A DNA stretch of 64,000 bases, taken from positions 151,809-215,808 of the IMG/VR virus record IMGVR_UViG_3300046653_000093; one strand, written 5' to 3'. The notes beneath the pieces were generated by a model. That model worked only from the letters and a program-made list of their open reading frames with translations, had not been told where the DNA came from and did not search any database. Made by a program: the position numbers and the translations under genes. Shown here piece after piece: positions 34,685-51,575 of the stretch (the stretch's first letter is position 1; the number at the start of each line of letters is the position of its first letter).

Positions 34685-34730
34685 GTTAACCTCAAATATT
34701 TAGCTCCATATATTTACTTACAACAATGAT

Positions 34731-34743
34731 ATGCAAAAATATT
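34731..34743 (-). promoter_or_regulatory. Putative late promoter element AATA-N5-GCAT (representative copy)
   Basis: TA-N5-GCAT found upstream of at least 12 gene starts; see findings. Confidence 0.6.
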
Positions 34744-34751
34744 CGTTGCAT

Positions 34752-34782
34752 AAACAAAAAGCCCCGGTTTGCACCGAGGCTC
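34752..34782 (-). terminator. Rho-independent terminator after major capsid gene
   Basis: Minus strand GCCTCGGT-GCAA-ACCGGGGC followed by TTTTTGTTT. Confidence 0.85.
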
Positions 34783-34813
34783 TCTGTATTCATTTTGAAC
34801 TAACTAGCTAGCA

Positions 34814-35815
34814 TTATCCGACGATTGTTGACTTGCGAGAAGCAGCAACGGCGCGTGGGTTCACGATACCGATACCAATCTCTTCCGACACAACCCATCC
34901 TAGTTTTAACTGTTTTGGTTCATCAGCTGGGATAACTTCGATGTCCTGACGGATTGGAAGCACACCAACGAACTCTGGGTCAGAGGCACCGTAGACTGTT
35001 CCTGGTGGAACGATCTTCGAAACCATAATGTCAGCGCCCCAGATGTGAGCATACAGACCTGTCTGAAGAATCTCACGCTGCGTAACTGGATCAATTTCAC
35101 CAGCCGAGGTTCCGGAAGATGCCCAGTTAAGGATGTCCGTAAACTCATTGATGTTCATGAAGTACTTCGTTGTTACAAGGTCCCAACGATCAATCTGAAC
35201 CTTGATCTCAACCAAGTCTCTCTTCAACAGACCGCTGTCTGTGATGTCCTGCAACGTGTTTTCAACACTCGATGCTGCGTCGATAGCCGCAAAGATGTTT
35301 GCATCTTCTTGAGCCATCAATTCTTGACGGGCCTTTTGAACGGCACGGTCAATAACGTTGAATCGACGACGACGAACCTCAGAGATACGAACTGTTGGGT
35401 TCGAATAAAGCTCGAACGTTGGCACAACGATACGATCACCGAACACACGAGACTCACCACCGGTACCATTGCTGGAAATGACGGTAGCTGCTACGTCAAT
35501 ATCACGCTCATACTTCGGGTCAACGCCTTGTGGAAGAGGATCAACCACCAACAGACGACGGGCAATTCCCTGATAATCCAAGTTACGACGAATTGGGTTC
35601 GCCATAGCCTGAGCAAGAGCAAGCTTTCCTTCCTGTGTCATAATCGCACGAGCAATAAGCTCATCGCGCTTTTCGTCATTCAAACCTGGTTGGCCCGAAA
35701 GAGCCATATTTGAAGGCTGGCCCTCTTCGAGGATCGCAGCGTACTTAACTAGCGTATTCAATGCATCCTTTACGGATGTGGCATTCATACCACCACGGGT
35801 ATCAAATAAAGACAT
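34814..35815 (-). CDS. Major capsid protein (HK97 fold)
   Basis: 333 aa from MSLFDTRGG with AGGAG RBS; LAQAMANPIRRNLDYQGIARR, IDRAVQKARQELMAQED, GWVVSEEIGIGIVNPRAVA; followed by terminator. Confidence 0.85.
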   Translation of the reverse strand: MSLFDTRGGMNATSVKDALNTLVKYAAILEEGQPSNMALSGQPGLNDEKRDELIARAIMTQEGKLALAQAMANPIRRNLDYQGIARRLLVVDPLPQGVDPKYERDIDVAATVISSNGTGGESRVFGDRIVVPTFELYSNPTVRISEVRRRRFNVIDRAVQKARQELMAQEDANIFAAIDAASSVENTLQDITDSGLLKRDLVEIKVQIDRWDLVTTKYFMNINEFTDILNWASSGTSAGEIDPVTQREILQTGLYAHIWGADIMVSKIVPPGTVYGASDPEFVGVLPIRQDIEVIPADEPKQLKLGWVVSEEIGIGIVNPRAVAASRKSTIVG

Positions 35816-35874
35816 ATATAATCTCCTAATGTTTGTTTGTAAGCTGCCAAAATCCATCAACAGCTAGCGGAAGA

Positions 35875-35895
35875 GGAGGGGAATTCCACCCCTCC
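35875..35895. promoter_or_regulatory. Intergenic stem-loop upstream of the capsid gene
   Basis: ggagggg-aattcca-cccctcc inverted repeat without a U-tract. Confidence 0.45.
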
Positions 35896-35914
35896 AAATC
35901 CATATATCGATCAA

Positions 35915-36610
35915 TTATGTAAGCGGAGGCGAGAAGTAGAACAGAGCACGGAATGCTCCACCACTTGGGTTCAGGATTGTTCCTGATGGGCTCAAGGCAG
36001 CCGTTACCAATGTGACCGGGGTTGTTACCAAGCTTCCACCCTTATAAGATTCGAAGTTCAAGAACCTTCCGACAATTGCATAACCATCAGAGTCAAAGTT
36101 CACCGAAGCGTTAGGTGTCAACAGACCAGCAGCCGTTGCGTACAACGGAGCACCAATCTTGAGGCTTGAGTTAGTTGGTACCAAGCCCGTGAGGACCGTG
36201 GTGTCAACTGCATCCAAAGTCACAGCGTATGTACCTGGCTTGTCCCACAGAGTGACCTTGCCAGAAGCGTATGCCGTGTGTGGGCCCAAGTTAACTGCTG
36301 GAGCCTGCAGACCATATGAATACTGTCCGGCGATTCCACCAATTAATGAACCAAACAAAGTTCCATATCCAAAGATACCTTCGTCAACCAACATAAGAGG
36401 ACGATCACCAGGAACCAAAACCGTAGTAACAACTGGTCGAGATGTTCCTACGTATCCGTCCTGATTCACATCAGCAGCTGCTTTATCAGCAGTGCGTGAT
36501 ACACCCTTAATCGTCGCGACTTCTCCACCCTTTAGGGTGATATAGATACCATCTGCGCCGTCAAATTGTCCTAGCGGTTGAATGCCAGGCTGAACAAGTT
36601 CTAATGCCAT
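35915..36610 (-). CDS. Capsid decoration/cement-like protein
   Basis: Directly upstream of MCP; VTLWDKPGTY..LKIGAPLYATAAGLLT similar to the 44703 and 43512 paralogs. Confidence 0.6.
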   Translation of the reverse strand: MALELVQPGIQPLGQFDGADGIYITLKGGEVATIKGVSRTADKAAADVNQDGYVGTSRPVVTTVLVPGDRPLMLVDEGIFGYGTLFGSLIGGIAGQYSYGLQAPAVNLGPHTAYASGKVTLWDKPGTYAVTLDAVDTTVLTGLVPTNSSLKIGAPLYATAAGLLTPNASVNFDSDGYAIVGRFLNFESYKGGSLVTTPVTLVTAALSPSGTILNPSGGAFRALFYFSPPLT

Positions 36611-36774
36611 AATTATTTCCTATTTGCACCACTTCTTTGGTGCGCCATGCGTCTTACATCTTTAGGTCTTACTTAAGTCGGTTTATGGGAACCGAGACAC
36701 CATAGTCTCGATTTATAAGGTATCGAGCAACCTCTATAATAAATGCAACTGTAGTAGTAGATGAGAAATTATTT

Positions 36775-37284
36775 TTATACATTTTCTATCAAATTCGTCA
36801 GCTGCTTCATACGCTCATCAATACTCATAGTTTTTGGCTGTTTTTCAGGGATTTTTGGAACACTTTTTTTACCAGAAGAAGGTATTTTTCTAGGTGTGGT
36901 ACTGCCCTCGGTGCCCTGATTTTGATTACCCGTTGGGCTCCACTCATCAGAATTTGCGTCATCTTGTGAAATGAACATACTGTTCATTGGTGTTCCGCTA
37001 AGGCGATTAGGGTCGCTTGGATCACCAAGGTCATCAAGATTAGCTTGGCCAAACTTTGATAGTAGTGTGAGTGCGGCATCCACATCAGATATGGATGCAT
37101 TTGGATTTAGCTGTCCATTGCGCCAAATCATTCCCCTTACAGATGGAACGCTTGCTGCAATTAGATTGTCGAGTCCCCTCATGACTCTGCGAAACTTCAA
37201 ATCAGAATCAATAGCAATGCTAGGAGATTTACTGTGTAAGTATCTCTTCCAGTCTTCTATTGTGTTCTGAGATCTCTCATCCAT
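36775..37284 (-). CDS. Hypothetical protein (putative internal head protein)
   Basis: 169 aa, translationally coupled block. Confidence 0.5.
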   Translation of the reverse strand: MDERSQNTIEDWKRYLHSKSPSIAIDSDLKFRRVMRGLDNLIAASVPSVRGMIWRNGQLNPNASISDVDAALTLLSKFGQANLDDLGDPSDPNRLSGTPMNSMFISQDDANSDEWSPTGNQNQGTEGSTTPRKIPSSGKKSVPKIPEKQPKTMSIDERMKQLTNLIENV

Positions 37285-38524
37285 TTAATCCTAAATTAGC
37301 AAGCAATTCGTTATTAAGATCACCCATCGATGGCTTTTGTGGGGTTGGCTGATTTGAGGCAATTTGAGCGTTAGTATTCGTCGGCTTTGGTTGCGCTTCT
37401 TTCGATGCGGCCTGAGCTAATGTCTCATGAATTTCTGGAGTCTTTTCTTTGGCGACATCAATAGCGCCTTGGAACTTTACAAGCTCTTGATCAATCGCCC
37501 CCAACAAACCTCCACTTGTGCTCTCTTGCTTTCCAGGGGCAAATTGCTTGATGGTAGAAAATACATCGGCTTTACCTTCAAGGGCATAGATAAGTGTCTC
37601 TTCTGGAGTATCTGTGAATGAACGTGTAAGAGCGTGCAGCTTTGCTGACCAGGAACCTCTTTCCTCGGTATCTTCACTAGCCATAATACGAATCGCACTA
37701 GCCCATCCTTTGATAGCTCCTTTGATTTTGGCCAATTGATTCATGTAATTTGTAACTATTTGATGAGCGGCTTCAGCCTTCTTCTTTTCATCTTCTTGCT
37801 GAGCGGCAGAAATTGATTCATCAACAGAATGAATTGGAACAAGTTGAGTCTTTACATTGTATACTTGCTTTGCCATATTCATTGCATTAATCATATCTCT
37901 TCTGATTGGAGCTGCATAGGCTCGATCAGATAATGGATTAAGTGCAGTTATTACCTTCTGAGCATTTTGATAAACGTCCTCAGCTGGAGGAGCTCCCGAG
38001 AAGAAATAATAACCCAGCCCCAATACTGCTGCCGCTATGCCGGCTACTGCTAAAGGGGCAATTGCCTCCTTTTTCATCTGGCGCTCTTCCAAACGCTGAG
38101 CACAAGAATCAGCAAGTACCATCAACTTCTCTTCTTCTTGACTGTCAAGCGTAAACGCTGACCTTATCAAAGAATCTAAAAGTTCTTTTTTTGCCGCAAC
38201 ATATCGCCTTTGTGTCAGTTGCCCATTCGGCATCTTCAACGCAATATAGGCCATCATGTCCTGATGCTGTTGTTCATTTTCAACAACAGAATTCATTGCA
38301 TCATAAGCACGACCAACTGTAGCTGTTTCTGGATGAGCAAATTCAACAATGTTCTTTTTCTTTTCCGGCTCTGGCTCGATGTTGTATAGCAAACGAATAG
38401 CATCGTCGGAAAGTGAGTCATAACTTCGCGGCAAAGTGCCAGATTGGCCATCCTCTTCGGCCACCGAAATTAGCCCTTGAGCAACGGCTATCTTTTCAAA
38501 TTCATCCCAAATATCATGGCTCAT
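37277..38524 (-). CDS. Putative internal head/ejection protein with TM segment
   Basis: KKEA followed by hydrophobic IAPLAVAGIAAAVLGLGYYFF; start refined to MSHDIW. Confidence 0.5.
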   Translation of the reverse strand: MSHDIWDEFEKIAVAQGLISVAEEDGQSGTLPRSYDSLSDDAIRLLYNIEPEPEKKKNIVEFAHPETATVGRAYDAMNSVVENEQQHQDMMAYIALKMPNGQLTQRRYVAAKKELLDSLIRSAFTLDSQEEEKLMVLADSCAQRLEERQMKKEAIAPLAVAGIAAAVLGLGYYFFSGAPPAEDVYQNAQKVITALNPLSDRAYAAPIRRDMINAMNMAKQVYNVKTQLVPIHSVDESISAAQQEDEKKKAEAAHQIVTNYMNQLAKIKGAIKGWASAIRIMASEDTEERGSWSAKLHALTRSFTDTPEETLIYALEGKADVFSTIKQFAPGKQESTSGGLLGAIDQELVKFQGAIDVAKEKTPEIHETLAQAASKEAQPKPTNTNAQIASNQPTPQKPSMGDLNNELLANLGLNG

Positions 38525-38525
38525 A

Positions 38526-39599
38526 TTATTTTCTCCCTTCATTCACGGATTTGAAAACATCATCAATGAACAGCTTCACAACCTCATCCCTTGATTTGTA
38601 GGGATCTGGAATAACCACTTCAAGTTGCCCAGGTTTCCAGTCCTCTGTTATTTCACGGACGGCATTCCAAAAAGAAGGTGTATTCAATATAATGCTTTTA
38701 TATTGGTCTAGACTTGGATATGACTGCAATGCCCATTTCAAAAGCATTTCGTGAGGTTGCTGTCCATTTAGTTCTTCAACCCACATGTCACCTGGTTTTG
38801 TTTTGTAAACATAAGAATTCACACCAGTAGGAGCTGGCGTCTGAGAACTACTAACCTGAGGTGCAGATGCTGCTGGTGTAATAGATCCTTGTCCAACTTC
38901 ACCTGGCTTCTTTGAAAATGCTGAGGTAGCAACTCCAGCTACCGCAAGCAAACCAGCAGATAGAAGTATCGTTTTCAAGAACCACGACAGCAAGCCAACA
39001 ATTATATTGCCCCTTCGTCTCGCACTAAATAGATTAAGTAAACCCTTCAATGGATTAAGCCAACCGCCTTCTGCACGATTGCGCTCAAGATATGAATTAC
39101 TTTTACCTATTGCTTCTTTGGTAAGTTGGCCTTTATTCCTCATCGCTCGTAATGGATAGAAAAGGTCATCAGCTTCGCCCTCTTCTGGCTGAGGTTCTGT
39201 TGAAGAGGTCTCTGAAGCTTCAGGTATGGCGGCTTGAGCTGCATTATTAATCTGCTCAGCGGTTACTGGTTTACCAGCCTCGATATCCGGCAAAATGGCA
39301 TTCTTAATTTTCTCGTAGATTGCTGTAAGATCATATCCAAAATGCTCTGCTATAGCAACCAAAGCGCCTAGTAAGGGATGAATACCAAAAAACAATGCTG
39401 GGGCTAAAAGATCTACAATCTTTCTTGGAGTGCTATAGTTTCCACCTACCAACGAAGAAACTTCATTACCAATACTTGGCAGAATAGCCGCTAGATCAAA
39501 AGCGTACTTCTCAAACCGATTGTCATTAAATTCAGCAAGAACCTGAAACGTTTCTTCAAGCAGAATTGTATCGGATACATACTGAATATCACCATTCAT
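38526..39599 (-). CDS. Putative internal head/ejection protein with TM segments
   Basis: Hydrophobic LLAPALFFGIHPLLGALVAIA and IIVGLLSWFLKTILLSAGLLAVAGVA; KYA and KEA motifs. Confidence 0.5.
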   Translation of the reverse strand: MNGDIQYVSDTILLEETFQVLAEFNDNRFEKYAFDLAAILPSIGNEVSSLVGGNYSTPRKIVDLLAPALFFGIHPLLGALVAIAEHFGYDLTAIYEKIKNAILPDIEAGKPVTAEQINNAAQAAIPEASETSSTEPQPEEGEADDLFYPLRAMRNKGQLTKEAIGKSNSYLERNRAEGGWLNPLKGLLNLFSARRRGNIIVGLLSWFLKTILLSAGLLAVAGVATSAFSKKPGEVGQGSITPAASAPQVSSSQTPAPTGVNSYVYKTKPGDMWVEELNGQQPHEMLLKWALQSYPSLDQYKSIILNTPSFWNAVREITEDWKPGQLEVVIPDPYKSRDEVVKLFIDDVFKSVNEGRK

Positions 39600-41401
39600 T
39601 ATTGTCCTTTTCTAGCCCTTTCCATTCTTTCTTTATACTCTCTTCCCCAAACGCCAAGCAGACCCCTAATCTTATCTTCCCACTTACCAAGAAAATCATG
39701 CTGCTTTTCAAGGGTTGATTGAAGTTCATTATACTTTTGCTCCAGCAATCTATCATCATGCTTACCGCGCTCTTTCCAATCATTAAACTGATTGATTGCA
39801 GTAGTGCTCCACTCATTATAGATGTCCCTCAATGAGTCCCTAACCGCCGCTGCCCATGGCCCAAAATTCGCATATTTTTCAGCATCATTAGTACCAGCTA
39901 CATTACTTAGAGCTATTTGTTCCCATCCACCAAATGACCAATCCTTAATATTTAGTTGTGGTAACAAACCTCCAATAGTCAAATCAGAAACAGATTTGCT
40001 TTGTCTGCTAGGAAAGTTCTGCATGATGATAAAATTACCAAGAGGTGGCCCTTGATTTGTTCTACCATAAGTATGTCCACTACTACCCTCACCTTCGCCC
40101 TCATCGCGTCGCTGATGAGCTTTACCAGTAGTTCCACCAGCTCCAGTGCCATGCAAAAGTTCCCTAATCATCTTCCTGGTTACAACTGGAACTTTTGGAT
40201 TACCACTAGCTTTGATAGCTTTTATTAGATCGTTCTTTATATCATTCCAAGCATTGGATATACTTTCCATTTGTTGGGCATAAAACTTACCAAGTTGAGC
40301 ATCATATTTATTTGCAATCTTACCTTTCCTATCTGGTCGTGGACTTGGCAAAGATCCTGGCTTTCCAGCGGTTCCATTCCACGCCCCATATAGTGCATCA
40401 AATTCTGCGTTTGCTCTTTGCAAAAACCATTTGATACTATCTTCAATAACACTCAGGCAGTGTGAATCAGAAGATTGAGCAGGGGCAACTGGAGCGGCCA
40501 CGACTGGAGCAGCGTCTTGTCCTAATCGGAAAATAGTTCTATCCAAAATCTCACTTGCCAATTTTCCGAAATAATCATCTAATGCCGCAGTAGCTGGAGC
40601 TTTAGCGGGAGCTAGTTTAGGAGCAGGCTGAGGTTCGGAATCTAATGGATTACAAGGGAAGTGAGGTTTCAGCCCACTCATAAAATCAAAGAAGCTTAGA
40701 AGATCTGCTAAATCTCCCATTGTTACTGGATGACGTCCCCAACCAACACCAAACGGATCTGATAAACCAGAATCTGGAAGAGATGGATCAATAACATCAA
40801 CAACAATCATTCCAGATCCCTCGGCAACAGATTCAACAGATGTTTGAATGCCAAGCGCACCGAATATTCTTGAGATGTTGTTTATGTTCTCACGAGCCTT
40901 CTCAATCAACTCTGCATCTTTCATTGATTGATATGGAATCGTACCAGTGCCTTCAGAAATTATTACGTCCTTGATGTTTAGCTGGGTCACCAAAGTCTTA
41001 ATTGCAACAAGTGCATCATGGGTATTCTTTCCCCATACACCATCGGCAGCTGCTGCACGCGATGAAGCCGACGATCCTGTTCTGGCAAAATGCACAGCCT
41101 GATCTGTAATGAGCTTAGCAGTCACCTTGGTATTTGGATCTTGTTGCTGTAAAGTGATAACAACTGATTGAGCAACATCTGGTTTACTTAGCTGAGTTCC
41201 TAAATCAACCATTAGGTTTTGCATTGTAGCAACTGTGCCATCAACATCTTTGTTGGTTGATTTAACGCCACCGGCAGGGGCTCCTCCACCACTAGGTGCG
41301 GCTCCGCCATGTCCACCAGGAATATGAGCCTTTCCTGTAACGCCACCACCGCCGACGCCAACCCAAGAGGCTACGTCCTGCCCAGCAAACTTAGAAGTCA
41401 T
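39599..41401 (-). CDS. Putative ejection protein with peptidoglycan-binding-like motif
   Basis: ADGVWGKNTHDAL (DGxxGxxT pattern of PG_binding_1 domains); 600 aa. Confidence 0.45.
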   Translation of the reverse strand: MTSKFAGQDVASWVGVGGGGVTGKAHIPGGHGGAAPSGGGAPAGGVKSTNKDVDGTVATMQNLMVDLGTQLSKPDVAQSVVITLQQQDPNTKVTAKLITDQAVHFARTGSSASSRAAAADGVWGKNTHDALVAIKTLVTQLNIKDVIISEGTGTIPYQSMKDAELIEKARENINNISRIFGALGIQTSVESVAEGSGMIVVDVIDPSLPDSGLSDPFGVGWGRHPVTMGDLADLLSFFDFMSGLKPHFPCNPLDSEPQPAPKLAPAKAPATAALDDYFGKLASEILDRTIFRLGQDAAPVVAAPVAPAQSSDSHCLSVIEDSIKWFLQRANAEFDALYGAWNGTAGKPGSLPSPRPDRKGKIANKYDAQLGKFYAQQMESISNAWNDIKNDLIKAIKASGNPKVPVVTRKMIRELLHGTGAGGTTGKAHQRRDEGEGEGSSGHTYGRTNQGPPLGNFIIMQNFPSRQSKSVSDLTIGGLLPQLNIKDWSFGGWEQIALSNVAGTNDAEKYANFGPWAAAVRDSLRDIYNEWSTTAINQFNDWKERGKHDDRLLEQKYNELQSTLEKQHDFLGKWEDKIRGLLGVWGREYKERMERARKGQ

Positions 41402-43122
41402 TATTTTCTCCCTTTGGCAGATTCTACAATTTTTCTCACACTGGACAAGAATATGTTCTTGTTAGGAGCATCAATGCCCATATCAGAAAGAGCCTCTTGA
41501 AGTTCAACCCATGGCTTGTTCTGATACTCATCAATAATTTCTTTGAGTTGTTGTATCTTGTTAGAAATATTCACTGCTTTCTTAGCCACGTCTATATCTT
41601 CGCTTTGTGTTTGTTCGCCCCAATATGTAGATGCCGCTTCAAGCTGTGATGTATCCATAGTAAATGGCTGAAGCTGATCTGAGCTCGCCATAGACTTGTA
41701 TTGATCCGAAATGGAGGTTCTTATACCATTTACCCAATTAACTATCTGATCAATAAGACCGGCATTCACTGCTCTCATTTGGCTGAATGTTGGTTCCTTG
41801 CTAAACTTAGCTAAAGCATCACTAATATCTTTTCCAATTCTAATCAATTGCCTCAGCGCAGTACTTACATCAGTTAGCCTGTCACCAGTCTTGATAGCAT
41901 TCAACTCGGTATACAATCTTTCAGGAAGACTTCTCATTACTGTTTGAGCTTTCACAATCGTATCGTTGTTTTCTCCAAAAGCAGATACATATACAGCTCT
42001 AACCTGTTGGGCTAGCCATTGACAAGCGGCCCAAGCATTATCATTATTTGTAGCAAACTGAATTCCGCCAGCAAAAATGTAGGATGAATCGTTGTTAGGA
42101 TTCATATAAGTAGATTCAAAAACCTGGCCAATACCAATGGCAGTAGATATCTTGCGAAGTGTATCTACTTGTGCCGTTGGAATAAGAGCATGAGCATTTT
42201 GTAGTTTTGTATATAGCGCTTCTGCAGTAACAGCTGGAACTTCGCCTTGCGTCAAAACACCTTCTGCGACAGCAACCTGTGCTACATTATTCCAAGAAGT
42301 AATGCTTCTTGGATTAACCTGAATGCCAGCTAAACGAGCAAAATAAATATATGCCGCTTGTTGCTCTGTGCCTGCCGGATCTGTAAGAATAAATGCGTCT
42401 AAAGACGGAGCGCTCTTTCTGGCAGTGTCAAACTCTTCTAATGTGGTTTGGACATTTGCAAGAATAGCCCTTCTTGTCTTCGGAGTTTCTCTACTTACAG
42501 TTGATGTTATTGGCGATATGCTTTGCTGGGGAGCTGCCTCTGAGGCAGCTGGTCCTCCTTGAGGCGCTCCTCCTTGGGAAGATGTATAATATCCTGGCGC
42601 TCCGCCCTCTTGCGCAACCTTATTAATCATCGAGGCCAATGTGGCCAATCGATTCATAGCCTGCTTTCCTGTAGGCTCCTTACGAGTTACAGCAAGAATT
42701 TTATCAGCGATACTCTGCATCGTTTCAAATGTTCCAAGATCTCCAGAACCCTCAATGAGATTCACGTCTCCATCGCGATGCGCAAAGTTAATCAAATCTT
42801 TATTTGTCTCTTGAGTAACATTATAAAATGCATTTTCTGCTTGCTTGAACATAACCAGCTTTTTTTCAAGATCTTCAGCTTGAACAATAAGACCTTTTCG
42901 TCTCATTGCATAAGCTAAGCGGGCGACATCAACAATGAGATCTTCAGAGGGAGAAGCATCAACTTCTTGATTGATGATTCTGGTTTGTTCAACCTCTTGG
43001 GCTGCAAGCTTAATTAGCTCGGAATCTGTGGGTTTGAAAAATCCCTTCTTCACAGCCTGACGCTCAAGTTCGCGGTATACTTCAGACTGATATAGATTAT
43101 CTGTATATTTTGAAAGCGTCAT
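41401..43122 (-). CDS. Putative internal head/ejection protein
   Basis: Helical; KLA and KVA motifs; FAHRDG resembles FAHPET in the 37277 gene; start refined to MTLSKY. Confidence 0.5.
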   Translation of the reverse strand: MTLSKYTDNLYQSEVYRELERQAVKKGFFKPTDSELIKLAAQEVEQTRIINQEVDASPSEDLIVDVARLAYAMRRKGLIVQAEDLEKKLVMFKQAENAFYNVTQETNKDLINFAHRDGDVNLIEGSGDLGTFETMQSIADKILAVTRKEPTGKQAMNRLATLASMINKVAQEGGAPGYYTSSQGGAPQGGPAASEAAPQQSISPITSTVSRETPKTRRAILANVQTTLEEFDTARKSAPSLDAFILTDPAGTEQQAAYIYFARLAGIQVNPRSITSWNNVAQVAVAEGVLTQGEVPAVTAEALYTKLQNAHALIPTAQVDTLRKISTAIGIGQVFESTYMNPNNDSSYIFAGGIQFATNNDNAWAACQWLAQQVRAVYVSAFGENNDTIVKAQTVMRSLPERLYTELNAIKTGDRLTDVSTALRQLIRIGKDISDALAKFSKEPTFSQMRAVNAGLIDQIVNWVNGIRTSISDQYKSMASSDQLQPFTMDTSQLEAASTYWGEQTQSEDIDVAKKAVNISNKIQQLKEIIDEYQNKPWVELQEALSDMGIDAPNKNIFLSSVRKIVESAKGRK

Positions 43123-43123
43123 A

Positions 43124-43447
43124 TTAATCCTCAAGGTCAAGCAGTGCTAAGCCATTCAAAAAGTTTGGATCTACCTTATCTTTCAGCTCTGGGTGTTGCT
43201 TTATTGCATCCGCCGCCTTTTTGAGATATGCTTTCAACGCGGGGTCACTGGCAACCTTCTCGCGAAAAGCTTCAATATCAGCCATCACTTGGTTCTCATG
43301 ATCGATAGCAGCGGTAACAGCATTCACCTTCTGAAGTTGCTCTCGCGCAAGCTCAGCTTGAGAATAGTTTCTCCACACTTCCGAGCTATTCATCACTCGT
43401 CTAGTCTGGTCATCGTCGAAAAAATCCTTCCAAACCTGATCGTTCAT
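43124..43447 (-). CDS. Hypothetical protein
   Basis: SSEVWRNY resembles QSEVYREL in the next gene; preceded by TA-N5-GCAT motif. Confidence 0.55.
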   Translation of the reverse strand: MNDQVWKDFFDDDQTRRVMNSSEVWRNYSQAELAREQLQKVNAVTAAIDHENQVMADIEAFREKVASDPALKAYLKKAADAIKQHPELKDKVDPNFLNGLALLDLED

Positions 43448-43511
43448 GTAAAACACCTTTAAATATGGCTATGGCAAACCTATTGGTATGCTTAGTTAGT
43501 GATAGTTTTCC

Positions 43512-43913
43512 TCAAAGCCACAAAATCTGCATGTAGTTCTTTTTAGAACCAGCCGGAGTAATAACCTTGGCCAATAAAAGAGCGCCCTCAAATGGTTGCC
43601 TACTGCTCAAAACACCATATTCATTACAGTATAGAGAGCTTCCAACTTTGATATCACTTTCCCTATCAAATCTATTCAAATCTACAATCATTCTTTGGGG
43701 ATATACATTTGCCATCTGCCTAAAATCTACAACATTACCACCAAAACAACGATTTCCTACCAATCCAAATGGAGCGCTTCCATCACATAAATCTATTACT
43801 AAATTATCTTTGTATTCAACAATACTAACAACATGACCCGGAGAAACGCTAACCCCTGGTTTTACGGGAAAGTGTATAGGATCTACGAATAAAGACTCGA
43901 TAAGTTTGAACAT
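43512..43913 (-). CDS. Decoration-like protein, short paralog of 44703..45398
   Basis: CDGSAPFGLV vs SDGRAPFGII; SLYCNEYGVLSSRQP vs ILFVSENGKLTTSQP; both end in ..WL. Confidence 0.55.
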   Translation of the reverse strand: MFKLIESLFVDPIHFPVKPGVSVSPGHVVSIVEYKDNLVIDLCDGSAPFGLVGNRCFGGNVVDFRQMANVYPQRMIVDLNRFDRESDIKVGSSLYCNEYGVLSSRQPFEGALLLAKVITPAGSKKNYMQILWL

Positions 43914-43915
43914 TG

Positions 43916-44695
43916 CTAAACCCCTGACGCTCTTTTTTGAGTCTCATCTGCTAGGGATACCGGCTTATTGCCCTTTTTGATATTGGCAATCGTTTCAAGC
44001 GGGCGAAGATTCTCTAGAGCCCATAGCTTTTGAAAGTTCTCGCAATCAAGTGAATCAAAGGTAAGTTTGCTTTTAGGGATTATATGATCTATCTGCCAGG
44101 TAAGTTTGCTTTTATCATAAACGCCATAATTATCCCAATTCATCCATGTCTCCCACAAAGATTCGATGTGAGATTTCAATTCCGCTGCAGTATACGGTAA
44201 TCGTTTGAATATTTCTTTTTCAAGACTTTTGCTAACATGAAATGGTTTAGTGGCCAGAATAGATCTTCTTATATAGGCCGACACATTCATACTCAATCTA
44301 TAAACAGGCTCAAGCCTTCGTTTGGAATAATACACCTTATGTGATTTCTTGATTACATCAGCATTATTAATAACCCAATTCTTGTAACTTTCTCCTTGAC
44401 AAATTTTACACCAGCTATAAACTCCAAGATTTGAACAGTTGGTTTTATGATATTGATCAATTGTTTTATATTGATTGCAATTGCTGCAAATTTTTCCATC
44501 AAGCTTTGGCTTTGCTCTCTTTTTTAGAGTTTGGTAATGCTGTTTTTGTTTGATTAAGATGATACTTCTATTCTCGGCATGATACTGATTATGGCATATT
44601 TTACATTGAGCCGACATACCATCAGACATAGACTTGTTTTTGTAAAATTCGCTTAAAGACTTAACCTCCTTGCATTTACAGCATTTCTTATCCAT
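43916..44695 (-). CDS. Free-standing HNH homing endonuclease
   Basis: Two CxxC..CKxC zinc modules; IESLWETWMNWDNYG..WQIDHIIP..LENLRPL; start refined to MDKKCC. Confidence 0.8.
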   Translation of the reverse strand: MDKKCCKCKEVKSLSEFYKNKSMSDGMSAQCKICHNQYHAENRSIILIKQKQHYQTLKKRAKPKLDGKICSNCNQYKTIDQYHKTNCSNLGVYSWCKICQGESYKNWVINNADVIKKSHKVYYSKRRLEPVYRLSMNVSAYIRRSILATKPFHVSKSLEKEIFKRLPYTAAELKSHIESLWETWMNWDNYGVYDKSKLTWQIDHIIPKSKLTFDSLDCENFQKLWALENLRPLETIANIKKGNKPVSLADETQKRASGV

Positions 44696-44702
44696 AAACA
44701 CT

Positions 44703-45398
44703 CTATAACCAAACGAATTCCAAAGTGCCAAAGGCAGCCGTTGGTGGCCCGGTCACCATCGCTACTCCAGGATAATCTTCATTTGGTTGTGATGTGGTTA
44801 ATTTTCCATTTTCAGATACAAATAATATAGAATTCAATGGATAACGCTGATTTGTCTCATACATATCGCATTGGAAAATTCCTCGTTGGAACCATACAGT
44901 AACATGGCCACTTCCAAGCGTAGAGTCATCACCAGATACGTTTGGAATTTGATATGTGTAGCTAACAATGGTACGAATCGAATCCGGAATACCATCTCCA
45001 TCAAAATCGAAGTTGAGCACTGTTCCGGCCGGGAATAGAACAACACCATTGCGGGCAATAAGTGCTACATCGACTGGTGATGTAATAAAGCTAGACGGAA
45101 TGATGTTTGGATTGCGAAGTTCCCATTTCAAATCAACCGTAGTAACTAATTGGCCACCCTCTTCAACTGCTGACAAAACCGGAACAATTACTTCTTCATC
45201 AATTGATGGGGCTGTAAAGGCTCTGGTTTTGAAATCATCAATAATACCAAATGGCGCTCTGCCATCACTTACACCACAGACTAAGTTATTTCCACGTAAA
45301 TAAAGCTGGGCAATCATTCCTGGTTCAAACTCAGCTACTGGATCAACTGGATATGATACTGGTATAGCATTTCCTATTTGTACAATCTTTAAACTCAT
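44703..45398 (-). CDS. Capsid decoration/cement-like protein
   Basis: Strong RBS (AAGGAGAGG); DDSTLGSGHVTVW..LFVSENGKLTT. Confidence 0.55.
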   Translation of the reverse strand: MSLKIVQIGNAIPVSYPVDPVAEFEPGMIAQLYLRGNNLVCGVSDGRAPFGIIDDFKTRAFTAPSIDEEVIVPVLSAVEEGGQLVTTVDLKWELRNPNIIPSSFITSPVDVALIARNGVVLFPAGTVLNFDFDGDGIPDSIRTIVSYTYQIPNVSGDDSTLGSGHVTVWFQRGIFQCDMYETNQRYPLNSILFVSENGKLTTSQPNEDYPGVAMVTGPPTAAFGTLEFVWL

Positions 45399-45429
45399 AC
45401 CTCTCCTTGCGAACTATAACAGTATATAT

Positions 45430-45457
45430 AACAAAGCCCCGGCAATACCGAGGCTCT
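45430..45457 (-). terminator. Rho-independent terminator (same stem as the post-MCP terminator)
   Basis: GCCTCGGT-ATT-GCCGGGGC followed by TTTGTT. Confidence 0.75.
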
Positions 45458-45483
45458 GTACTGAAGAAAATATCTTCAAATTA

Positions 45484-46104: not shown

Positions 46105-46121
46105 TATTTCCTCCAATATAT

Positions 46122-46496
46122 TTAGTCAGTGTCAAGTCCTAAAAACTTAAAAACATTCTCGGCTTCCTTCTTATTTGTTTTATCAAAGAAATTCTCACAA
46201 TTTTTTCGATAATCAGGATCCGAATAAAAGCGCATTACATGAGCCTTTTGATTGAATTCTGGTAAAAATTCAACATCAGATGTACTATCTGCTAACGATA
46301 TCATTACTGCAGTTACTTCTTCTGCACGAGCTGTTCTACCAACTCTTTCGAAACTTTCAGCCGCATTATTCAGCGCCTGCATTGCTGCAAAAACTAACTG
46401 ATCATATTGCTGAGACTCTTCTAAAAGAGCTTCCTGTTGGGCATTTTGCATACCCTCAAAAAGCTCCTCTGCGCAAGATCCTTGCTTGAAAATCAT
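46122..46496 (-). CDS. Hypothetical protein
   Basis: 124 aa; ALNNAAESFERVG resembles segments in neighbours (LLKARNLLENAG; LCNASEILDEAG). Confidence 0.55.
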   Translation of the reverse strand: MIFKQGSCAEELFEGMQNAQQEALLEESQQYDQLVFAAMQALNNAAESFERVGRTARAEEVTAVMISLADSTSDVEFLPEFNQKAHVMRFYSDPDYRKNCENFFDKTNKKEAENVFKFLGLDTD

Positions 46497-48113: not shown

Positions 48114-51100
48114 TTAGAACTTCAAACCTTTTGACTCAAAGTAGTTATCAAAGAAACTCTTGATATCTTGCTCGCCTTCTTGTGCAACCTTGGCCATTGG
48201 TAGAATTACTTCGCCTGAACTTAGAAGACCAACCATAGGAATGGAAGCCTGCTTGTTCATAGATGGTTGTCGTGCCAAAATATTCTTGATGCTCTCAAAT
48301 CCCGCGTCATTCCACTTCATAATGTCGTTGACTTGTGAATCAAGCTGACCCTCAGTAATCATGCCTTTAGCAATCATTTGATGGGCAACTTCATAAGCTC
48401 TCTTGATACGTCCCTTGTAAGACTCAACTTCCTCAGCTTGCTTGGCTTTGGCATGTTCCTGTGTCAACTTGGTTGCGAAATCTTTACTTTCTGTATCGCC
48501 CTGACCAAACAGTTCCTTCCAATATTTAACTGCTTCCGCGTCAACACCATGGGAAACCAACTTATCAACATCATCAGCCTTCATCTTGCCTTCTGCAACT
48601 AGAGCCTGAATCATCTCAGCTTGCTTACGTACACGAGGTGGCATATTGGCCAACTCAAGCATGTAGCTTTGAATATCCTTTGGCACATGGAATTCAGCAC
48701 CTGGAACATTTGGCTTTACATCCAAGTTACCGGCGTCAACTGCACTAACACTGCCACCTGGATGCGCATCGTTAGACAATTCATTAAACCCAAGCAAGCC
48801 CTTTTCAGCTAGCTTTATACGTGCCTGGGCACGCCCTTCTTTAGTTGATAGTTCCAAAGTTCCTCCTGCTGTTACTGTTACCTCTCCTAGTTGCTGAGTT
48901 GTTCCATCTGGAGTCTTCAACGACAACTTGGCATCTGCCTTATCCGAAGCTCCCTTGCCCTTGATGTTAGCTAACCAGCTATCGAATGTACCTCCGTCTT
49001 CCGCCGCACCTTCATCAGCACATGGCAATTCACCAGTTGCTGCGTCTGCAGACTCTTCTTCAGCTCCATCCTTTGCATCGGCGCATTCTTCATCTTCTGC
49101 TCCGTCTTTTGCATCAGCGGCATCAGCACATTCCTCGGTTCCGTCAGCTGCATCTGCAGTCTCTTCGGTTTCTTCTTCCGAAGCGAAAATTGCGTCAAGA
49201 AGATCTTTTTCTGGATCTTTCTGTGAAGCGCGCTTCTCCAACTCAGCAGTTCCGTAAGCATACTTAACAACAGCCTCCATCAACTTACCAGCATCAACCA
49301 ACATGGCCTTTGCATCTTTGACTGCCGAAATTGTTAGTGCGTTCAGATATTCACGCTGCTCTTCGGTCATAGAAGCATAAGTTTCCTTATAGACCCTCTT
49401 TGCTGTGTTGATTTCACGCATGTGCTTCGCCAAAGAAGTAATCGTCTCATCGACGCCCTCTTGCAACATACCATTCACGCGCTTACGCATTGACTGAAGT
49501 TGAGACGCGGTCTTTGGCCCTTCCGAGAACTCTGCATCACCTGCAGGCTCAACGTCTGGCATAGCATCTGCATCTTCAGAAACAGCACCACTGACCTTGT
49601 CACGAAGATCACTAAGTTTGCCACCCATCTCATCAAACAAAGACTGAAGGTCATCGACGATTTCATCAGTATTCCCGCCCTTTCCGCCAACATTCTTTGG
49701 TGGCTCAAGTGGAGGAAGATCTGCGCCGCCTGCAGCACCATCGACTGGAGGAGCTGGAGGAGCAGCTGGAGCTGCTTGTGCGTTCTTTAATAGAGCGTCT
49801 GCTGTAGCCTGAAAGCCCTCGGTCTGAATGCGATTCAGCAATGACTTACCAAAACGCTCAGTAGCAACGGCGTCATAAAGAGACTCTGAATTACCCTTGG
49901 TAATTTGATCAACAGAGGCGCGAAGAATTGCTTTATCATTAGCATAAACGACCCAGCTCGAAGCTGACTTATTGACACGGCCATCAGGAAGAGCAACCTT
50001 CTCAAAACGAGCCTTCACCAACGAAGCACGAAGCAACTTCTCCTTCTCTTTCTCGTCGTCATCATAAAGACCTTCGACATCGCCAACGCCTGGGAATGGT
50101 TTTTCACCAACCATTTGCTTATCAAGCATACGGTCTTTCTCATTCAAAGGATCCTTTGAATATTGAACTTTACCTGGCTTTGGCTCTTCTGTGCCTAGGT
50201 AATATCCCTTGCTCTGCAGTTGTTCCTTTGCCTTCTTAAGAGCGGCTTCGCGGAACAATGCGCGCTCGTGCTCATCAGCTAAACGCTGAAGTTCTTTCTT
50301 TACCTTCTCGTCACCTGGGTACATACCCTCTTCGTCACCTGTGTTTGGGAAAGGAGCCGGACCATGTAAATTCTTGTCCATCAATCTCGCCTTCTCATTC
50401 AAAGGATCCTTTGAATATTGAGCCTGTCCCGGCTTTGGTTCTTCTGTACCTTGAAAATATGCATTCTTCTTTGTCATGGTTGGTTCCTCATTATTAGATA
50501 CTACTCTAAGTAAATTCTCCTGTAGGCTAGCCAGTTTCGTCTGCGCTCCCAAAATTGCTCTCTGTAACTCTGAGGCGTAAGTTGGGAAAGCCTCAGGCGG
50601 ATTTATCTGAGTCGATGGTTCTGCACCAGATTCTTCCATCGACCAGCTAGAGCGAGTTGGGCCAACCGCATCGCTCTCATCACTTTCATCAAAGTCATTG
50701 GCCATAGATTCGATCTTGCCCATCAGACTTTGAAGGTCTTTCTGAATAGATGTCAAATCTTGCCTAGACAAACCTTTCTTTACTTCCAAATAATCTGAAA
50801 GTAACCCGGCAGCCTTAGCAATATCACTGGCAATAATATGCTTAACCTTGGCTTTTGGGTCTGCTCCGGAAACAACTAATGACAGTTCAATCGGAGTCAA
50901 ATCTAGGTTGATTTCACCGTAGCAGCTCTTGTTCTTCATATGTTGGCAGAAATCTTTTTCAGTTCTGGCGACTCTGTGGCAGTCGGAACATACAGCTCGC
51001 CCTACGGCTGTACCCATCGAAACATTGTTGGCAACCCCTGTCTTAACCTTATCGGCCAAGTCACCATAATTTTTCGCATCAAGAGCACAAAGAGCAATTA

Positions 51101-51575
51101 CTCTCTTTCTACGGTCATCATATACGGTGTCAACAATAACGCCTCGAATCTTATCAACCGACTGTGATTGATGATCGAGGCATAATGGACGACCGACCCA
51201 ATTTTTATATGCTACTTTCAACTCTGCTTCTGGAAAGATGTCTCGGTTATTATTCCGATAAGGCATAAGGGTTTTTTCATTACAAACCCACTTTACACCG
51301 CCTTCCTTAGTAGATTCCCAAGCAGCTTCGACATCTTTTCCTTGTGATGTCTTCTTTGGGGTTCCATCATCATTAATGCAAGCTGCCTCAGCGGCATGCA
51401 TCATCACGCAAGTAAAATATAAGAAGTCTTTTGCTTTTGGAGCGATAACCTTCAACTCTTGAGCAAACTTGTACATGCGGTTTTCAATATCCAAATCCAT
51501 ATCATCTGCCAATTTCTCAATTGGCTTGATATCCTCTGGTCTGATGAAAACCGATTCTCCTAGTTTAATAAGCAT
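48114..51575 (-). CDS. Prohead protease fused to long scaffold/internal region
   Basis: N-terminal protease-like block NNNRDIF..GRPLCLDH..RGVIVD..VSMGT..CSDC..CQHM..IELSLVVSGADPKA, followed by coiled-coil, acidic and repeat regions; 1153 aa. Confidence 0.75.
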   Translation of the reverse strand: MLIKLGESVFIRPEDIKPIEKLADDMDLDIENRMYKFAQELKVIAPKAKDFLYFTCVMMHAAEAACINDDGTPKKTSQGKDVEAAWESTKEGGVKWVCNEKTLMPYRNNNRDIFPEAELKVAYKNWVGRPLCLDHQSQSVDKIRGVIVDTVYDDRRKRVIALCALDAKNYGDLADKVKTGVANNVSMGTAVGRAVCSDCHRVARTEKDFCQHMKNKSCYGEINLDLTPIELSLVVSGADPKAKVKHIIASDIAKAAGLLSDYLEVKKGLSRQDLTSIQKDLQSLMGKIESMANDFDESDESDAVGPTRSSWSMEESGAEPSTQINPPEAFPTYASELQRAILGAQTKLASLQENLLRVVSNNEEPTMTKKNAYFQGTEEPKPGQAQYSKDPLNEKARLMDKNLHGPAPFPNTGDEEGMYPGDEKVKKELQRLADEHERALFREAALKKAKEQLQSKGYYLGTEEPKPGKVQYSKDPLNEKDRMLDKQMVGEKPFPGVGDVEGLYDDDEKEKEKLLRASLVKARFEKVALPDGRVNKSASSWVVYANDKAILRASVDQITKGNSESLYDAVATERFGKSLLNRIQTEGFQATADALLKNAQAAPAAPPAPPVDGAAGGADLPPLEPPKNVGGKGGNTDEIVDDLQSLFDEMGGKLSDLRDKVSGAVSEDADAMPDVEPAGDAEFSEGPKTASQLQSMRKRVNGMLQEGVDETITSLAKHMREINTAKRVYKETYASMTEEQREYLNALTISAVKDAKAMLVDAGKLMEAVVKYAYGTAELEKRASQKDPEKDLLDAIFASEEETEETADAADGTEECADAADAKDGAEDEECADAKDGAEEESADAATGELPCADEGAAEDGGTFDSWLANIKGKGASDKADAKLSLKTPDGTTQQLGEVTVTAGGTLELSTKEGRAQARIKLAEKGLLGFNELSNDAHPGGSVSAVDAGNLDVKPNVPGAEFHVPKDIQSYMLELANMPPRVRKQAEMIQALVAEGKMKADDVDKLVSHGVDAEAVKYWKELFGQGDTESKDFATKLTQEHAKAKQAEEVESYKGRIKRAYEVAHQMIAKGMITEGQLDSQVNDIMKWNDAGFESIKNILARQPSMNKQASIPMVGLLSSGEVILPMAKVAQEGEQDIKSFFDNYFESKGLKF

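What the first reader, a model, noticed from the sequence alone, without database searches (positions are those of the whole stretch)
36775..43447. Candidate ejectosome block with cleavage-unmasked membrane segments
Seen: six tightly coupled genes under one TA-N5-GCAT element. One protein has a hydrophobic helix directly after a K-x-A site (MKKEA|IAPLAVAGIAAAVLGLGYYFF), another has two hydrophobic segments, and one has a DGxxGxxT peptidoglycan-binding-like motif. Inference: internal proteins that are ejected to build a trans-envelope channel or membrane compartment after protease removal of propeptides, which is unexpected alongside a tape measure and contractile tail.
Basis: inference. Interest (0 to 1): 0.6.

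Follow-up and report, generated by a model that had tools for sequence, protein, structure and literature searches.

The report
Megaphage head-operon proteins with hidden membrane helices
Six back-to-back genes in the head-building operon of an uncultured giant phage encode unknown but conserved proteins with membrane-type helices and a cell-wall-binding-like motif; they are probably proteins packed in the head and shot into the host, but nothing here proves it.

Summary
The sequence observations hold. Six minus-strand genes (36775-43447) are translationally coupled. They lie between a protease-scaffold fusion and the decoration and major capsid genes of a roughly 390-kb contractile-tailed relative of phage G. 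The g421 hydrophobic helix after K-x-A, the two g357 hydrophobic segments and the g600 DGxWGxxT motif are all present and conserved across a large metagenomic clade.

New findings:
- g421 and g579 share a paralogous N-terminal domain of about 155 aa. The domain defines a family of at least 1,631 unannotated clusters.
- The conserved K-x-A sites in g421 and g357 fall in low-confidence linkers of the AlphaFold models.
- The block appears co-transcribed with the capsid gene, between two strong terminator-like hairpins.

No protein matches a known family or fold. Peptidoglycan-binding homology is only sub-threshold.

Best reading (confidence about 0.4): these are internal head proteins, loaded through an N-terminal targeting domain, trimmed by the prohead protease and ejected to act on the host envelope. 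This parallels the long-propeptide ejection proteins of SPN3US and phiKZ, so it is not unexpected beside a contractile tail. Cleavage, presence in virions and channel formation are all untested.

Rival readings that remain open:
- a late lysis-type cassette, as at the same position in phage G
- membrane-bound assembly factors
- plain core proteins

The parts
43488..43498 (-). TA-N5-GCAT element (TAACTAAGCAT) in the 55-64-nt gap upstream of g110
   Evidence: The motif is enriched in intergenic DNA on the sense strand, but promoter function is untested.
43124..43447 (-). g110: small acidic protein (pI 4.8). Found only in the 9 nearest loci.
   Evidence: There is only a weak, sub-threshold PHROG hit to a tail assembly chaperone (E 0.0035).
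41401..43122 (-). g579: conserved N-terminal domain, then a Q/A/P/G-rich linker and a variable C-terminal part. No hydrophobic helix.
   Evidence: Only the first 160 aa or so are conserved across the clade.
42586..43128 (-). N-terminal domain of g579, paralogous to that of g421 (shared AHP motif)
   Evidence: hhalign probability 95.6%, E 1.3e-8 over 141 columns. hmmsearch E 2.4e-7. A and H are invariant over 78 sequences.
39599..41401 (-). g600: Gly-rich N-terminus, DGxWGxxT module and low-complexity linkers. Distant relatives have two genes here.
   Evidence: No residue that is E or H is invariant among the 8 orthologues, so a standard hydrolase is unlikely.
40982..41239 (-). Peptidoglycan-binding-like module of g600 (aa 55-140: V..MQ..M..L helix ... 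DGVWGKNT..AL)
   Evidence: The motif is invariant. Matches to the peptidoglycan-binding clan are all sub-threshold.
38526..39599 (-). g357: protein with two conserved hydrophobic segments and a confidently modelled C-terminal domain (aa 273-357)
   Evidence: No fold match: Z at most 5.1, TM at most 0.31.
39351..39407 (-). g357 hydrophobic segment 1 (aa 65-83), modelled as a helix-break-helix
38916..39005 (-). g357 hydrophobic segment 2 (aa 199-228), part of one long helix. K209, S214, A215 and G216 are nearly invariant.
37277..38524 (-). g421: N-terminal domain, K-x-A, hydrophobic helix, then a four-helix bundle. It is the most widely conserved member of the block.
38063..38071 (-). K158-E-A160 junction of g421 (numbered from the ORF start at 38542). 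It lies in a pLDDT<50 linker (aa 155-160).
38000..38065 (-). Ala/Gly-rich hydrophobic helix of g421 (aa 160-181)
37388..37990 (-). Four-helix bundle of g421 (aa 185-385, pLDDT 85-97)
   Evidence: Only generic helical-bundle matches, Z at most 11.1.
36775..37284 (-). g169: hydrophilic protein (GRAVY -0.78) with a disordered-looking basic tail. Found in 12 loci.
48114..51575 (-). Context: 1153-aa prohead protease domain (aa 108-216) fused to a long acidic, repetitive, scaffold-like region
   Evidence: phrog_18299 E 1.4e-15. 36% identity to phage G gp19. Sequence.
35915..36610 (-). Context: g231, at the position of a capsid decoration protein
   Evidence: Present in 76 of 80 loci. Phage G gp26 is the positional analogue.
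34814..35815 (-). Context: major capsid protein (start at MSLFD...)
   Evidence: phrog_2522 E 1.9e-76. 53% identity to phage G gp27. N-terminal alignment.
45431..45459 (-). Context: strong terminator-like hairpin upstream of the unit
   Evidence: -27 kcal/mol for the folded stretch, followed by a U-run
34754..34787 (-). Context: strong terminator-like hairpin after the capsid gene
   Evidence: -26 kcal/mol for the folded stretch, followed by a U-run

Best explanation
The block is a clade-specific part of the late head-morphogenesis operon of a roughly 390-kb contractile-tailed relative of phage G.

Its products are most likely internal head proteins. The proposed sequence of events is:
1. g579 and g421 are loaded into the prohead through their shared N-terminal domain of about 155 aa.
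2. They are trimmed by the prohead protease, possibly at the conserved K-x-A junctions.
3. They leave the head with the DNA.
4. In the host envelope, the Ala/Gly-rich helix of g421 and the hydrophobic segments of g357 enter the membrane, and the DGxWGxxT module of g600 contacts peptidoglycan.

Shown here: gene order, coupling, conservation, the paralogy, the hydrophobic segments, the motif and the lack of known homologues.

Inferred only: packaging, cleavage, ejection and membrane action.
For: Position and co-expression:
- The block lies between the protease-scaffold fusion and the decoration and capsid genes.
- It sits within one unit bounded by the only two strong terminator-like hairpins, which also holds the capsid gene.
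- All junctions are translationally coupled.
- The arrangement is syntenic in up to 63 of 80 related loci. Identity is 25-40% where the capsid protein keeps 79%, the fast evolution typical of internal proteins.

Shared N-terminal domain:
- It is present in two proteins with unrelated C-terminal parts.
- It is always at residues 2-160 in 1,631 cluster representatives.
- It is poorly modelled on its own.
- This parallels the propeptides of about 125 residues of SPN3US gp50, gp53 and gp54, which are read as capsid-targeting sequences (PMC5694885).

Candidate cleavage sites:
- Conserved K-x-A sites lie at the pLDDT<50 linkers of g421 (aa 155-160) and g357 (aa 29-33).
- Two conserved phi-K-x-A sites lie in the capsid protein's N-terminal 35 residues.

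Route to the envelope:
- None of the six proteins has a signal peptide, yet g600 carries a peptidoglycan-binding-like module.

The scaffold role is already covered by the 1153-aa fusion and a 351-aa hydrophilic protein.
Against: - There are no proteomic, expression or cleavage data. The phage is uncultured.
- No similarity to any known ejection, pilot or core protein in PHROGs, Pfam, PDB, BFVD or the ESM Atlas.
- The N-terminal domain is the best-conserved part, which is unusual for a disposable propeptide.
- K.A enrichment is modest: 24 against 15.1 expected for the block.
- Phage G has a lysis cassette at the same map position, so position alone is weak evidence.
- No endolysin was found elsewhere in the near-identical 392-kb record among seven families. 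This leaves room for a lysis role.
Confidence: 0.4

Rival explanations
1. The block is a late envelope-acting (lysis-type) cassette that happens to sit in the head operon. g357 and g421 would be membrane proteins that permeabilise or bridge the envelope at the end of infection. g600 would bind the wall.
For: - Phage G has an endolysin (gp22/23) and two membrane proteins (gp24, gp25, the latter annotated as holin) at exactly this position, between protease and decoration/capsid.
- The near-identical 392-kb record, estimated 91% complete, has no match to seven common lysin families.
- g600 has a conserved peptidoglycan-binding-like motif and no signal peptide, as endolysins do.
Against: - At 357 and 421 aa these proteins are far larger than holins. 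g421's helix is central, not N-terminal as in i-spanins, and none of the six N-termini shows a lipoprotein-type sequence, judged by eye from the translations (no predictor was run).
- g600 has no invariant E or H that could be catalytic and no hydrolase domain.
- There is no sequence similarity to the phage G genes.
- The N-terminal domain shared with the non-membrane protein g579 has no counterpart in lysis systems.
Confidence: 0.2
2. The proteins are membrane-anchored prohead assembly factors. They would tether or nucleate the portal-scaffold initiation complex at the inner membrane, as gp40 does for T4 proheads, and would not be in the virion.
For: - The genes are in the head operon.
- The residues flanking the g421 helix fit an N-in topology: K/R before it in 193 of 202 family members.
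- T4 proheads assemble on the membrane (PMC5694885, introduction).
Against: - This does not explain the wall-binding-like module in a protein without a signal peptide.
- It would require export of the 240-aa C-terminal bundle of g421.
- Relatives such as Tunturi_5 have a single gene between protease and decoration, so the block is not needed for this capsid type.
Confidence: 0.15
3. The proteins are plain internal core or scaffold accessory proteins. Their hydrophobic helices would be buried protein-protein interfaces and never meet a membrane.
For: - The block occupies the map position of scaffold genes.
- The proteins are acidic with low-complexity linkers and helical bundles.
- In the g421 model, several structural matches start at residues 160-166, so they align the hydrophobic helix together with the bundle.
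Against: - Segments with Kyte-Doolittle scores of 1.9-2.4 over 19 residues, flanked by K/R, are conserved in about 80% of 251 members. This is unusual for a soluble core protein.
- The conserved DGxWGxxT module points outside the capsid.
- Scaffold function is already provided by the 1153-aa fusion.
Confidence: 0.15

Closest known systems
Ejection (internal head) proteins of the giant myophages SPN3US and phiKZ, e.g. SPN3US gp47, gp50, gp53 and gp54 and phiKZ gp86 (PMC5694885)
   Same: - The phage is giant and contractile-tailed.
- The genes lie among head genes.
- Paralogous proteins carry long N-terminal regions. Those of SPN3US are 124-127 residues and are read as capsid-targeting propeptides removed by the prohead protease.
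- The proteins evolve fast and are unannotated.
   Different: - No sequence or fold similarity was found.
- The protease here matched PHROG phrog_18299 and phage G gp19; no comparison with the T4 gp21/phiKZ gp175 (S80) proteases was run.
- The candidate cleavage motif is K-x-A rather than S/A/G-x-E.
- Conserved membrane-type helices and a wall-binding-like module are present here.
- Processing and packaging are unproven here.
Podophage ejectosome or core proteins (T7 gp14, gp15, gp16; P22 gp7, gp20, gp16; N4 ejection proteins, PMC13434306)
   Same: The concept is the same: proteins stored in the head that leave with the DNA and span the envelope, some with membrane helices and a wall-directed domain (from established knowledge of T7 gp16).
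   Different: - There were no PHROG or Pfam matches to those families.
- Those phages lack a contractile tail.
- Their genes lie after the capsid and tail genes, not between protease and capsid.
- No muralytic domain was found here.
Phage G gp22-gp25 (endolysin plus two membrane proteins) at the same map position
   Same: - The map position is the same, between prohead protease and decoration/capsid.
- The capsid lineage is related (53% identity).
- Membrane-type helices are present.
- gp22 and gp25 were reported in particle proteomics (PMC12484599).
   Different: - There is no sequence similarity.
- The phage G proteins are small (118-173 aa) with N-terminal helices, and they come with a recognisable muramidase/amidase.
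- That proteome also lists many non-structural proteins, so presence in it is weak evidence.
Peptidoglycan-binding domains of clan PGBD (Pfam PG_binding_1 PF01471, PG_binding_3 PF09374)
   Same: - The motif D-G-x-[WF]-G-x-x-T-x-x-A-[LV] is present.
- It is preceded by a V/M..M/L....G helix.
- Distant relatives have the canonical spacing.
   Different: All matches are below threshold. In the window's own protein, about 50 residues are inserted between the first helix and the motif.

Membership tests
Giant-myophage ejection proteins with long propeptides (SPN3US/phiKZ type) | Encoded within the head gene region of a contractile-tailed giant phage | tested here: met
   Terminase, portal, protease, capsid and sheath were mapped. 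The block lies between protease and capsid.
Giant-myophage ejection proteins with long propeptides (SPN3US/phiKZ type) | N-terminal region of more than 100 residues shared by paralogues, separate from the mature part | tested here: met
   g421 aa 1-157 is paralogous to g579 aa 5-185. The C-terminal parts are unrelated.
Giant-myophage ejection proteins with long propeptides (SPN3US/phiKZ type) | Cleavage by the prohead protease at a defined motif | not testable with these tools
   There is only indirect evidence: conserved K-x-A in low-pLDDT linkers and modest K.A excess.
Giant-myophage ejection proteins with long propeptides (SPN3US/phiKZ type) | Presence in purified virions and loss on ejection | not testable with these tools
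   The phage is uncultured and no proteome is available.
Giant-myophage ejection proteins with long propeptides (SPN3US/phiKZ type) | Sequence or fold homology to known members | tested here: not met
   No PHROG or Pfam hit. tblastn of g421 and g357 against 50,697 phage records found nothing. BFVD returned only an uncharacterised homologue.
Podophage ejectosome proteins (T7 gp14-16, P22 gp7/20/16) | Match to the family profiles | tested here: not met
   No PHROG or Pfam match at E<=0.01 or 0.1.
PGBD clan (PG_binding_1 / PG_binding_3) | Profile match above the curated threshold | tested here: not met
   - 0 of 8 full-length g600 orthologues match.
- The six-frame search of the window's own genome at E<=10 does not hit g600.
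- Of 17 domain slices, PG_binding_3 matches 4 (best E 0.019) and PG_binding_1 matches 1 (E 0.16), all below cut-off.
PGBD clan (PG_binding_1 / PG_binding_3) | DGxxGxxT core motif with a preceding helix, conserved | tested here: met
   - D, G, W, G and T are invariant in 17 sequences.
- The motif is present in 20 of 25 loci.
- hhalign places it on the DGIFGNNT of phiKZ gp144 (E 0.057).
- The PDB profile search aligns it with the N-terminal domain of cell-wall hydrolase 4xxt_A (E 0.79).
PGBD clan (PG_binding_1 / PG_binding_3) | Three-helix fold | not tested
The Atlas's own model of g600 is poor (mean pLDDT 0.44).
Holin / spanin / endolysin lysis cassette | Recognisable muralytic enzyme in or next to the cassette | tested here: not met
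   No hydrolase domain in the six proteins. g600 has no invariant E or H.
Holin / spanin / endolysin lysis cassette | Small membrane proteins (holin), or an N-terminally anchored i-spanin with a lipoprotein o-spanin | tested here: not met
   The proteins are 357 and 421 aa. g421's helix is at aa 160-181. No lipoprotein-type N-terminus was seen by eye in the translations; no predictor was run.
Prohead scaffolding protein | Acidic, helical protein encoded between protease and capsid, needed for shell assembly | tested here: inconclusive
   Position and acidity fit. However, the scaffold-like 1153-aa fusion and a 351-aa hydrophilic protein already occupy that role, and the membrane-type helices are atypical.

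The most novel reading that the evidence does not exclude
g421 works like a class I viral fusion protein kept inside a phage head. The prohead protease would cut at K158-x-A160 and make an Ala/Gly-rich, fusion-peptide-like helix the new N-terminus of a helical bundle. On ejection this would spring into the host membrane. Together with g357 and the wall-binding g600 it would build a trans-envelope conduit or compartment for a genome of about 390 kb, in a phage that also has a contractile tail.
Probability: 0.12. Interest if true: 0.8.

Novelty: new variant of a known kind. Interest (0 to 1): 0.5.

Why it matters
How phages with 400-kb genomes get their DNA across the host envelope is unknown. 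Phage G is the only cultured member of this capsid lineage. This block defines a large, unannotated protein family: at least 1,631 clusters at 50% identity share the N-terminal domain. The architecture (targeting-like domain, conserved K-x-A junction, membrane helix, helical bundle) is testable by expression, cleavage and membrane assays without culturing the phage. If the N-terminal domain does target proteins to the capsid, it would extend the long-propeptide rule of phiKZ-like phages to an unrelated giant-phage lineage, whose protease is most similar to phage G gp19 and which would use a different candidate motif (K-x-A).

Tried and rejected
- **Family scans.** PHROGs and Pfam on all six proteins gave nothing usable.
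- **Cultured phages.** megablast of the block and tblastn of g421 and g357 against 50,697 phage records found no match. Local tblastn against the phage G head region matched only the capsid protein and the protease.
- **Solved structures by sequence.** PDB profile searches with A1, A2 and A4 gave only coiled-coil-type or chance hits.
- **Structure.**
  - The AlphaFold model of g421 matched only generic four-helix bundles (Z at most 11.1, below the tool's noise mark of about 13 for helical bundles).
  - The g357 model matched nothing (Z at most 5.1).
  - Weak (Z 4.0-4.4) resemblance of the g357 C-terminal domain to the N-terminal parts of the phage neck chains 9jlf_b, 8hdr_a and 9cc7_D is noted but not relied on.
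- **ESM Atlas by features.** No usable hit for g421 or g600.
- **Word-index protein search with A1.** 207 hits, all in the same clade and all hypothetical.
- **Complex prediction.** g357 with g421 (aa 150-421) gave no answer (score 0.01). This is evidence neither for nor against binding.
- **PG_binding_1.** The model does not reach g600, even at E<=10 in the window's own genome.
- **Lysin search.** Seven lysin families searched in the 392-kb near-identical record found nothing. Other lysin families were not searched.
- **K.A counts against shuffles.** The excess is only modest, so K-x-A as a protease motif stays a hypothesis.
- **Promoter and terminator scan.** The sigma-70 promoter and simple terminator scan of 34000-46500 gave no more sites than shuffles. 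The two strong hairpins were found by reading and then folding the sequence.
- **Not used.** The sequencing-run and read-laying tools were not used.

Full report
**Setting**

All genes of the window run on the minus strand. The window is the last 64 kb of a 215.8-kb viral contig that CheckV rates about 50% complete. A 392-kb IMG/VR record, rated 91% complete, carries the same block at 99-100% protein identity.

In the direction of transcription the window holds:
- large terminase, 58758-60626, and portal, 56818-58728;
- a 1153-aa protein, 48114-51575. Residues 108-216 match a head maturation protease (phrog_18299, E 1.4e-15) and phage G gp19 (36% identity). The rest is long, acidic and repetitive, which looks like a scaffold;
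- several small genes and an HNH/endonuclease VII gene, 43916-44731;
- the six-gene block;
- a 231-aa gene at the position of a decoration protein;
- the major capsid protein, 34814-35860 (phrog_2522, E 1.9e-76; 53% identity to Bacillus phage G gp27);
- fibre-like genes and a tail sheath, 3595-6060.

The phage is therefore a contractile-tailed megaphage of the phage G capsid lineage.

**The observation**

The six genes are real open reading frames and are tightly coupled. Each junction is TAATG, TAA-N-ATG or ATGGATGA, with a GGAG-like box in the end of the upstream gene. Alignment with orthologues moves two starts: g579 begins at the ATG at 43122 and g421 at the ATG at 38524.

The Kyte-Doolittle scan confirms one hydrophobic segment in g421 (aa 160-178, score 1.96). 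It confirms two in g357 (aa 65-83 and aa 199-228). None of the other four proteins has one. g600 has DGVWGKNT at aa 120-127.

The TA-N5-GCAT element lies at 43488-43498. The bare pattern is at chance level in the window, 46 against 48.8 expected. But 8 of the 30 sense-strand copies lie in the 2.8% of intergenic DNA, several exactly 7 nt before an ATG. Genome-wide, 15 of 66 minus-strand copies are intergenic against 2 of 56 plus-strand copies. It is probably a real late-gene signal, but it is not specific to this block.

Folding shows strong hairpin-plus-U structures only at 45431-45459 and 34754-34787. The likely transcription unit therefore runs from g231b through the HNH gene, g133, the six genes and g231 to the capsid gene. 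This argues against expression only as early non-structural genes.

**Conservation**

A capsid-protein scan of IMG/VR returned 214 relatives. 80 loci were kept, on contigs of up to 480 kb. Local tblastn found:

| Gene | Loci with a match (of 80) |
|---|---|
| g421 | 63 |
| g357 | 45 |
| g579 (N-terminal 160 aa only, in the distant ones) | 32 |
| g169 | 12 |
| g600 | 10 |
| g110 | 9 |

The matches are always in the same order. Identity is 25-40% where the capsid protein keeps about 79%.

The hydrophobic helix of g421, the K before it, and both hydrophobic segments of g357 are conserved throughout.

At the g600 position, distant relatives have two genes. The first usually carries DGxWGP[RK]T, and the motif is present in 20 of 25 loci.

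**A shared N-terminal domain**

The first 155 residues or so of g421 and g579 are paralogous:
- hhalign gives probability 95.6%, E 1.3e-8, over 141 columns.
- An HMM of the g579 domain hits g421 at E 2.4e-7 among the genome's ORFs.
- An Ala and the His of an AHP motif are invariant over 78 sequences.

A profile of this domain, searched against 1.84 billion cluster representatives, found 1,631 proteins at E<=0.001. In the 150 listed, the domain sits at residues 2-160 of proteins mostly 400-460 aa long. Of 251 full-length members, 202 have a hydrophobic segment starting at median residue 160. In 193 of those it is preceded by K or R. None carries a functional name.

**Structure**

AlphaFold2 on 51 sequences models g421 with mean pLDDT 71:
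- The N-terminal domain is poor (pLDDT 40-60).
- Residues 155-160, the K-x-A junction, are below 50.
- The hydrophobic helix scores 70-79.
- Residues 185-385 form a confident four-helix bundle (pLDDT 85-97).

Matches are only to generic helical bundles. The best Z is 11.1, below the tool's noise mark for helical proteins.

g357 is modelled at mean pLDDT 78. Its low-confidence linkers are at aa 29-33, another conserved K-x-A, and at aa 233-264. It has no fold match.

**The K-x-A idea**

Conserved [KR]-x-[AGS] pairs are found at:
- g421 residues 17, 127 and 158;
- g357 residues 31 and 161;
- g579 residues 27, 44 and 99;
- g600 residues 280 and 292.

Most of these have a hydrophobic residue two positions upstream. 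The capsid protein's N-terminal 35 residues hold two conserved copies, SVKDA and LVKYA. The scaffold-like tail of the protease protein has 21 K.A against 12.4 expected (5 of 500 shuffles reach that count). The six block proteins together have 24 against 15.1.

This is suggestive but not proof. A lysine before a membrane helix is also what the positive-inside rule predicts.

**The peptidoglycan-binding-like module**

PG_binding_1 does not match any of the 8 full-length orthologues. It does not match g600 in a six-frame search of the window's own genome at E<=10.

The distant relatives have canonical spacing...VMDTM.RIG, then 8-10 residues, then DG.WGPRTN.AL. With them included, weak but convergent signals appear:
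- PG_binding_3 matches 4 of 17 slices (best E 0.019) and PG_binding_1 matches 1 (E 0.16).
- The only PDB profile hit is the N-terminal domain of cell-wall hydrolase 4xxt_A, aligned on the motif (E 0.79).
- hhalign sets the motif on the DGIFGNNT of phiKZ endolysin gp144 (E 0.057).

I call this 'peptidoglycan-binding-like', not a member of the family. g600 has no invariant Glu or His, so it is unlikely to be a standard wall hydrolase.

**Interpretation**

The best-supported reading is that these are internal head proteins. The reasons are:
- they lie in the late head unit;
- they evolve fast;
- two of them share a long N-terminal module that ends at a flexible, conserved junction;
- none has a signal peptide, although one has a wall-binding-like module and two have membrane-type helices. 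Reaching the envelope would then require either ejection from the virion or release at lysis.

The closest precedent is the set of ejection proteins of the giant myophages SPN3US and phiKZ. Their N-terminal propeptides of about 125 residues are removed by the prohead protease and are read as capsid-targeting sequences (PMC5694885).

There is no homology to those proteins, or to podophage ejectosome proteins.

**Rivals**

*Lysis-type cassette.* Phage G carries endolysin gp22/23 and the membrane proteins gp24 and gp25 at the same map position. gp22 and gp25 were reported in particle proteomics, but that list also contains many non-structural proteins (PMC12484599). No match to seven lysin families was found in the 392-kb near-identical record. 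A lysis-type role therefore cannot be excluded, although the sizes, the helix positions and the lack of a catalytic domain argue against it.

*Assembly factors or core proteins.* Membrane-bound assembly factors and plain core proteins are the other rivals. The distant relative Tunturi_5 has a single gene between protease and decoration. The block is therefore an accessory of this clade, not a requirement of the capsid type.

**Verdict**

- The proteins are new families. The kind of system, if the best reading is right, is a new variant of the giant-phage ejection-protein theme.
- The complex prediction gave no answer and is not used as evidence.

Noticed in passing
window 48114-51575 (-): The 1153-aa protein fuses a prohead protease domain (aa 108-216) to a very long acidic region. 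That region contains two near-repeats of about 100 aa (YFQGTEEPKPGQAQYSKDPLNEK... and YYLGTEEPKPGKVQYSKDPLNEK...). It looks like a protease-scaffold fusion far larger than phage G gp19 (300 aa).
   Followed up: partly
window 52411-53511 (-): A 366-aa protein between portal and protease has a tyrosine/dual-specificity phosphatase domain (PF03162, E 2.5e-14, above cut-off). Given its place in the head module, it could be a packaged effector.
   Followed up: no
window 43512-45398 (-): An HNH/endonuclease VII gene (43916-44731) sits between g231b (231 aa, present in 39 loci) and g133. g133 matches the N-terminal and C-terminal parts of g231b (33% and 26% identity) but lacks its middle. The HNH gene is present in only 6 of 80 loci. 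This looks like a mobile endonuclease insertion beside a partial duplication.
   Followed up: partly
window 7603-7613, 14538-14548, 17483-17493, 24207-24217 (-): Copies of TA-N5-GCAT end exactly 7 nt before the ATG of tail-region genes that lack a clear Shine-Dalgarno box. The element may be a late promoter giving very short leaders, or a translation signal.
   Followed up: partly
L016, L019, L024, L060, L075, L076 and others, between the g579-like and g357-like genes: Where the window has the single gene g600, distant clade members have two genes, of about 350-430 aa and about 500 aa. The DGxWGxxT motif is in the first one. This is either a fusion in the window's subclade or a split in the others.
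   Followed up: partly
G001 (392-kb record behind L002): No match to Phage_lysozyme, Amidase_2, SLT, Peptidase_M15_4, Peptidase_M23, Glyco_hydro_19 or Glyco_hydro_108 in a record rated 91% complete. The phage's endolysin is unidentified.
   Followed up: partly
window 32517-34205 (-): A 562-aa Gly/Thr/Ser-rich protein just after the capsid gene has a sub-threshold match to the Latrotoxin_C domain (E 4e-4, 20.5 bits against a cut-off of 25). This is probably chance.
   Followed up: no
window 63248-63991 (-): A tRNA nucleotidyltransferase-like gene (phrog_2244, E 9e-16) lies upstream of the terminase region.
   Followed up: no
window 38526-38774 (-), g357 aa 276-357: The confidently modelled C-terminal domain of g357 weakly resembles the N-terminal part of phage neck and adaptor chains: 9jlf_b, 8hdr_a and 9cc7_D, at Z 4.0-4.4. 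This is too weak to use. It could hint at docking near the portal.
   Followed up: no
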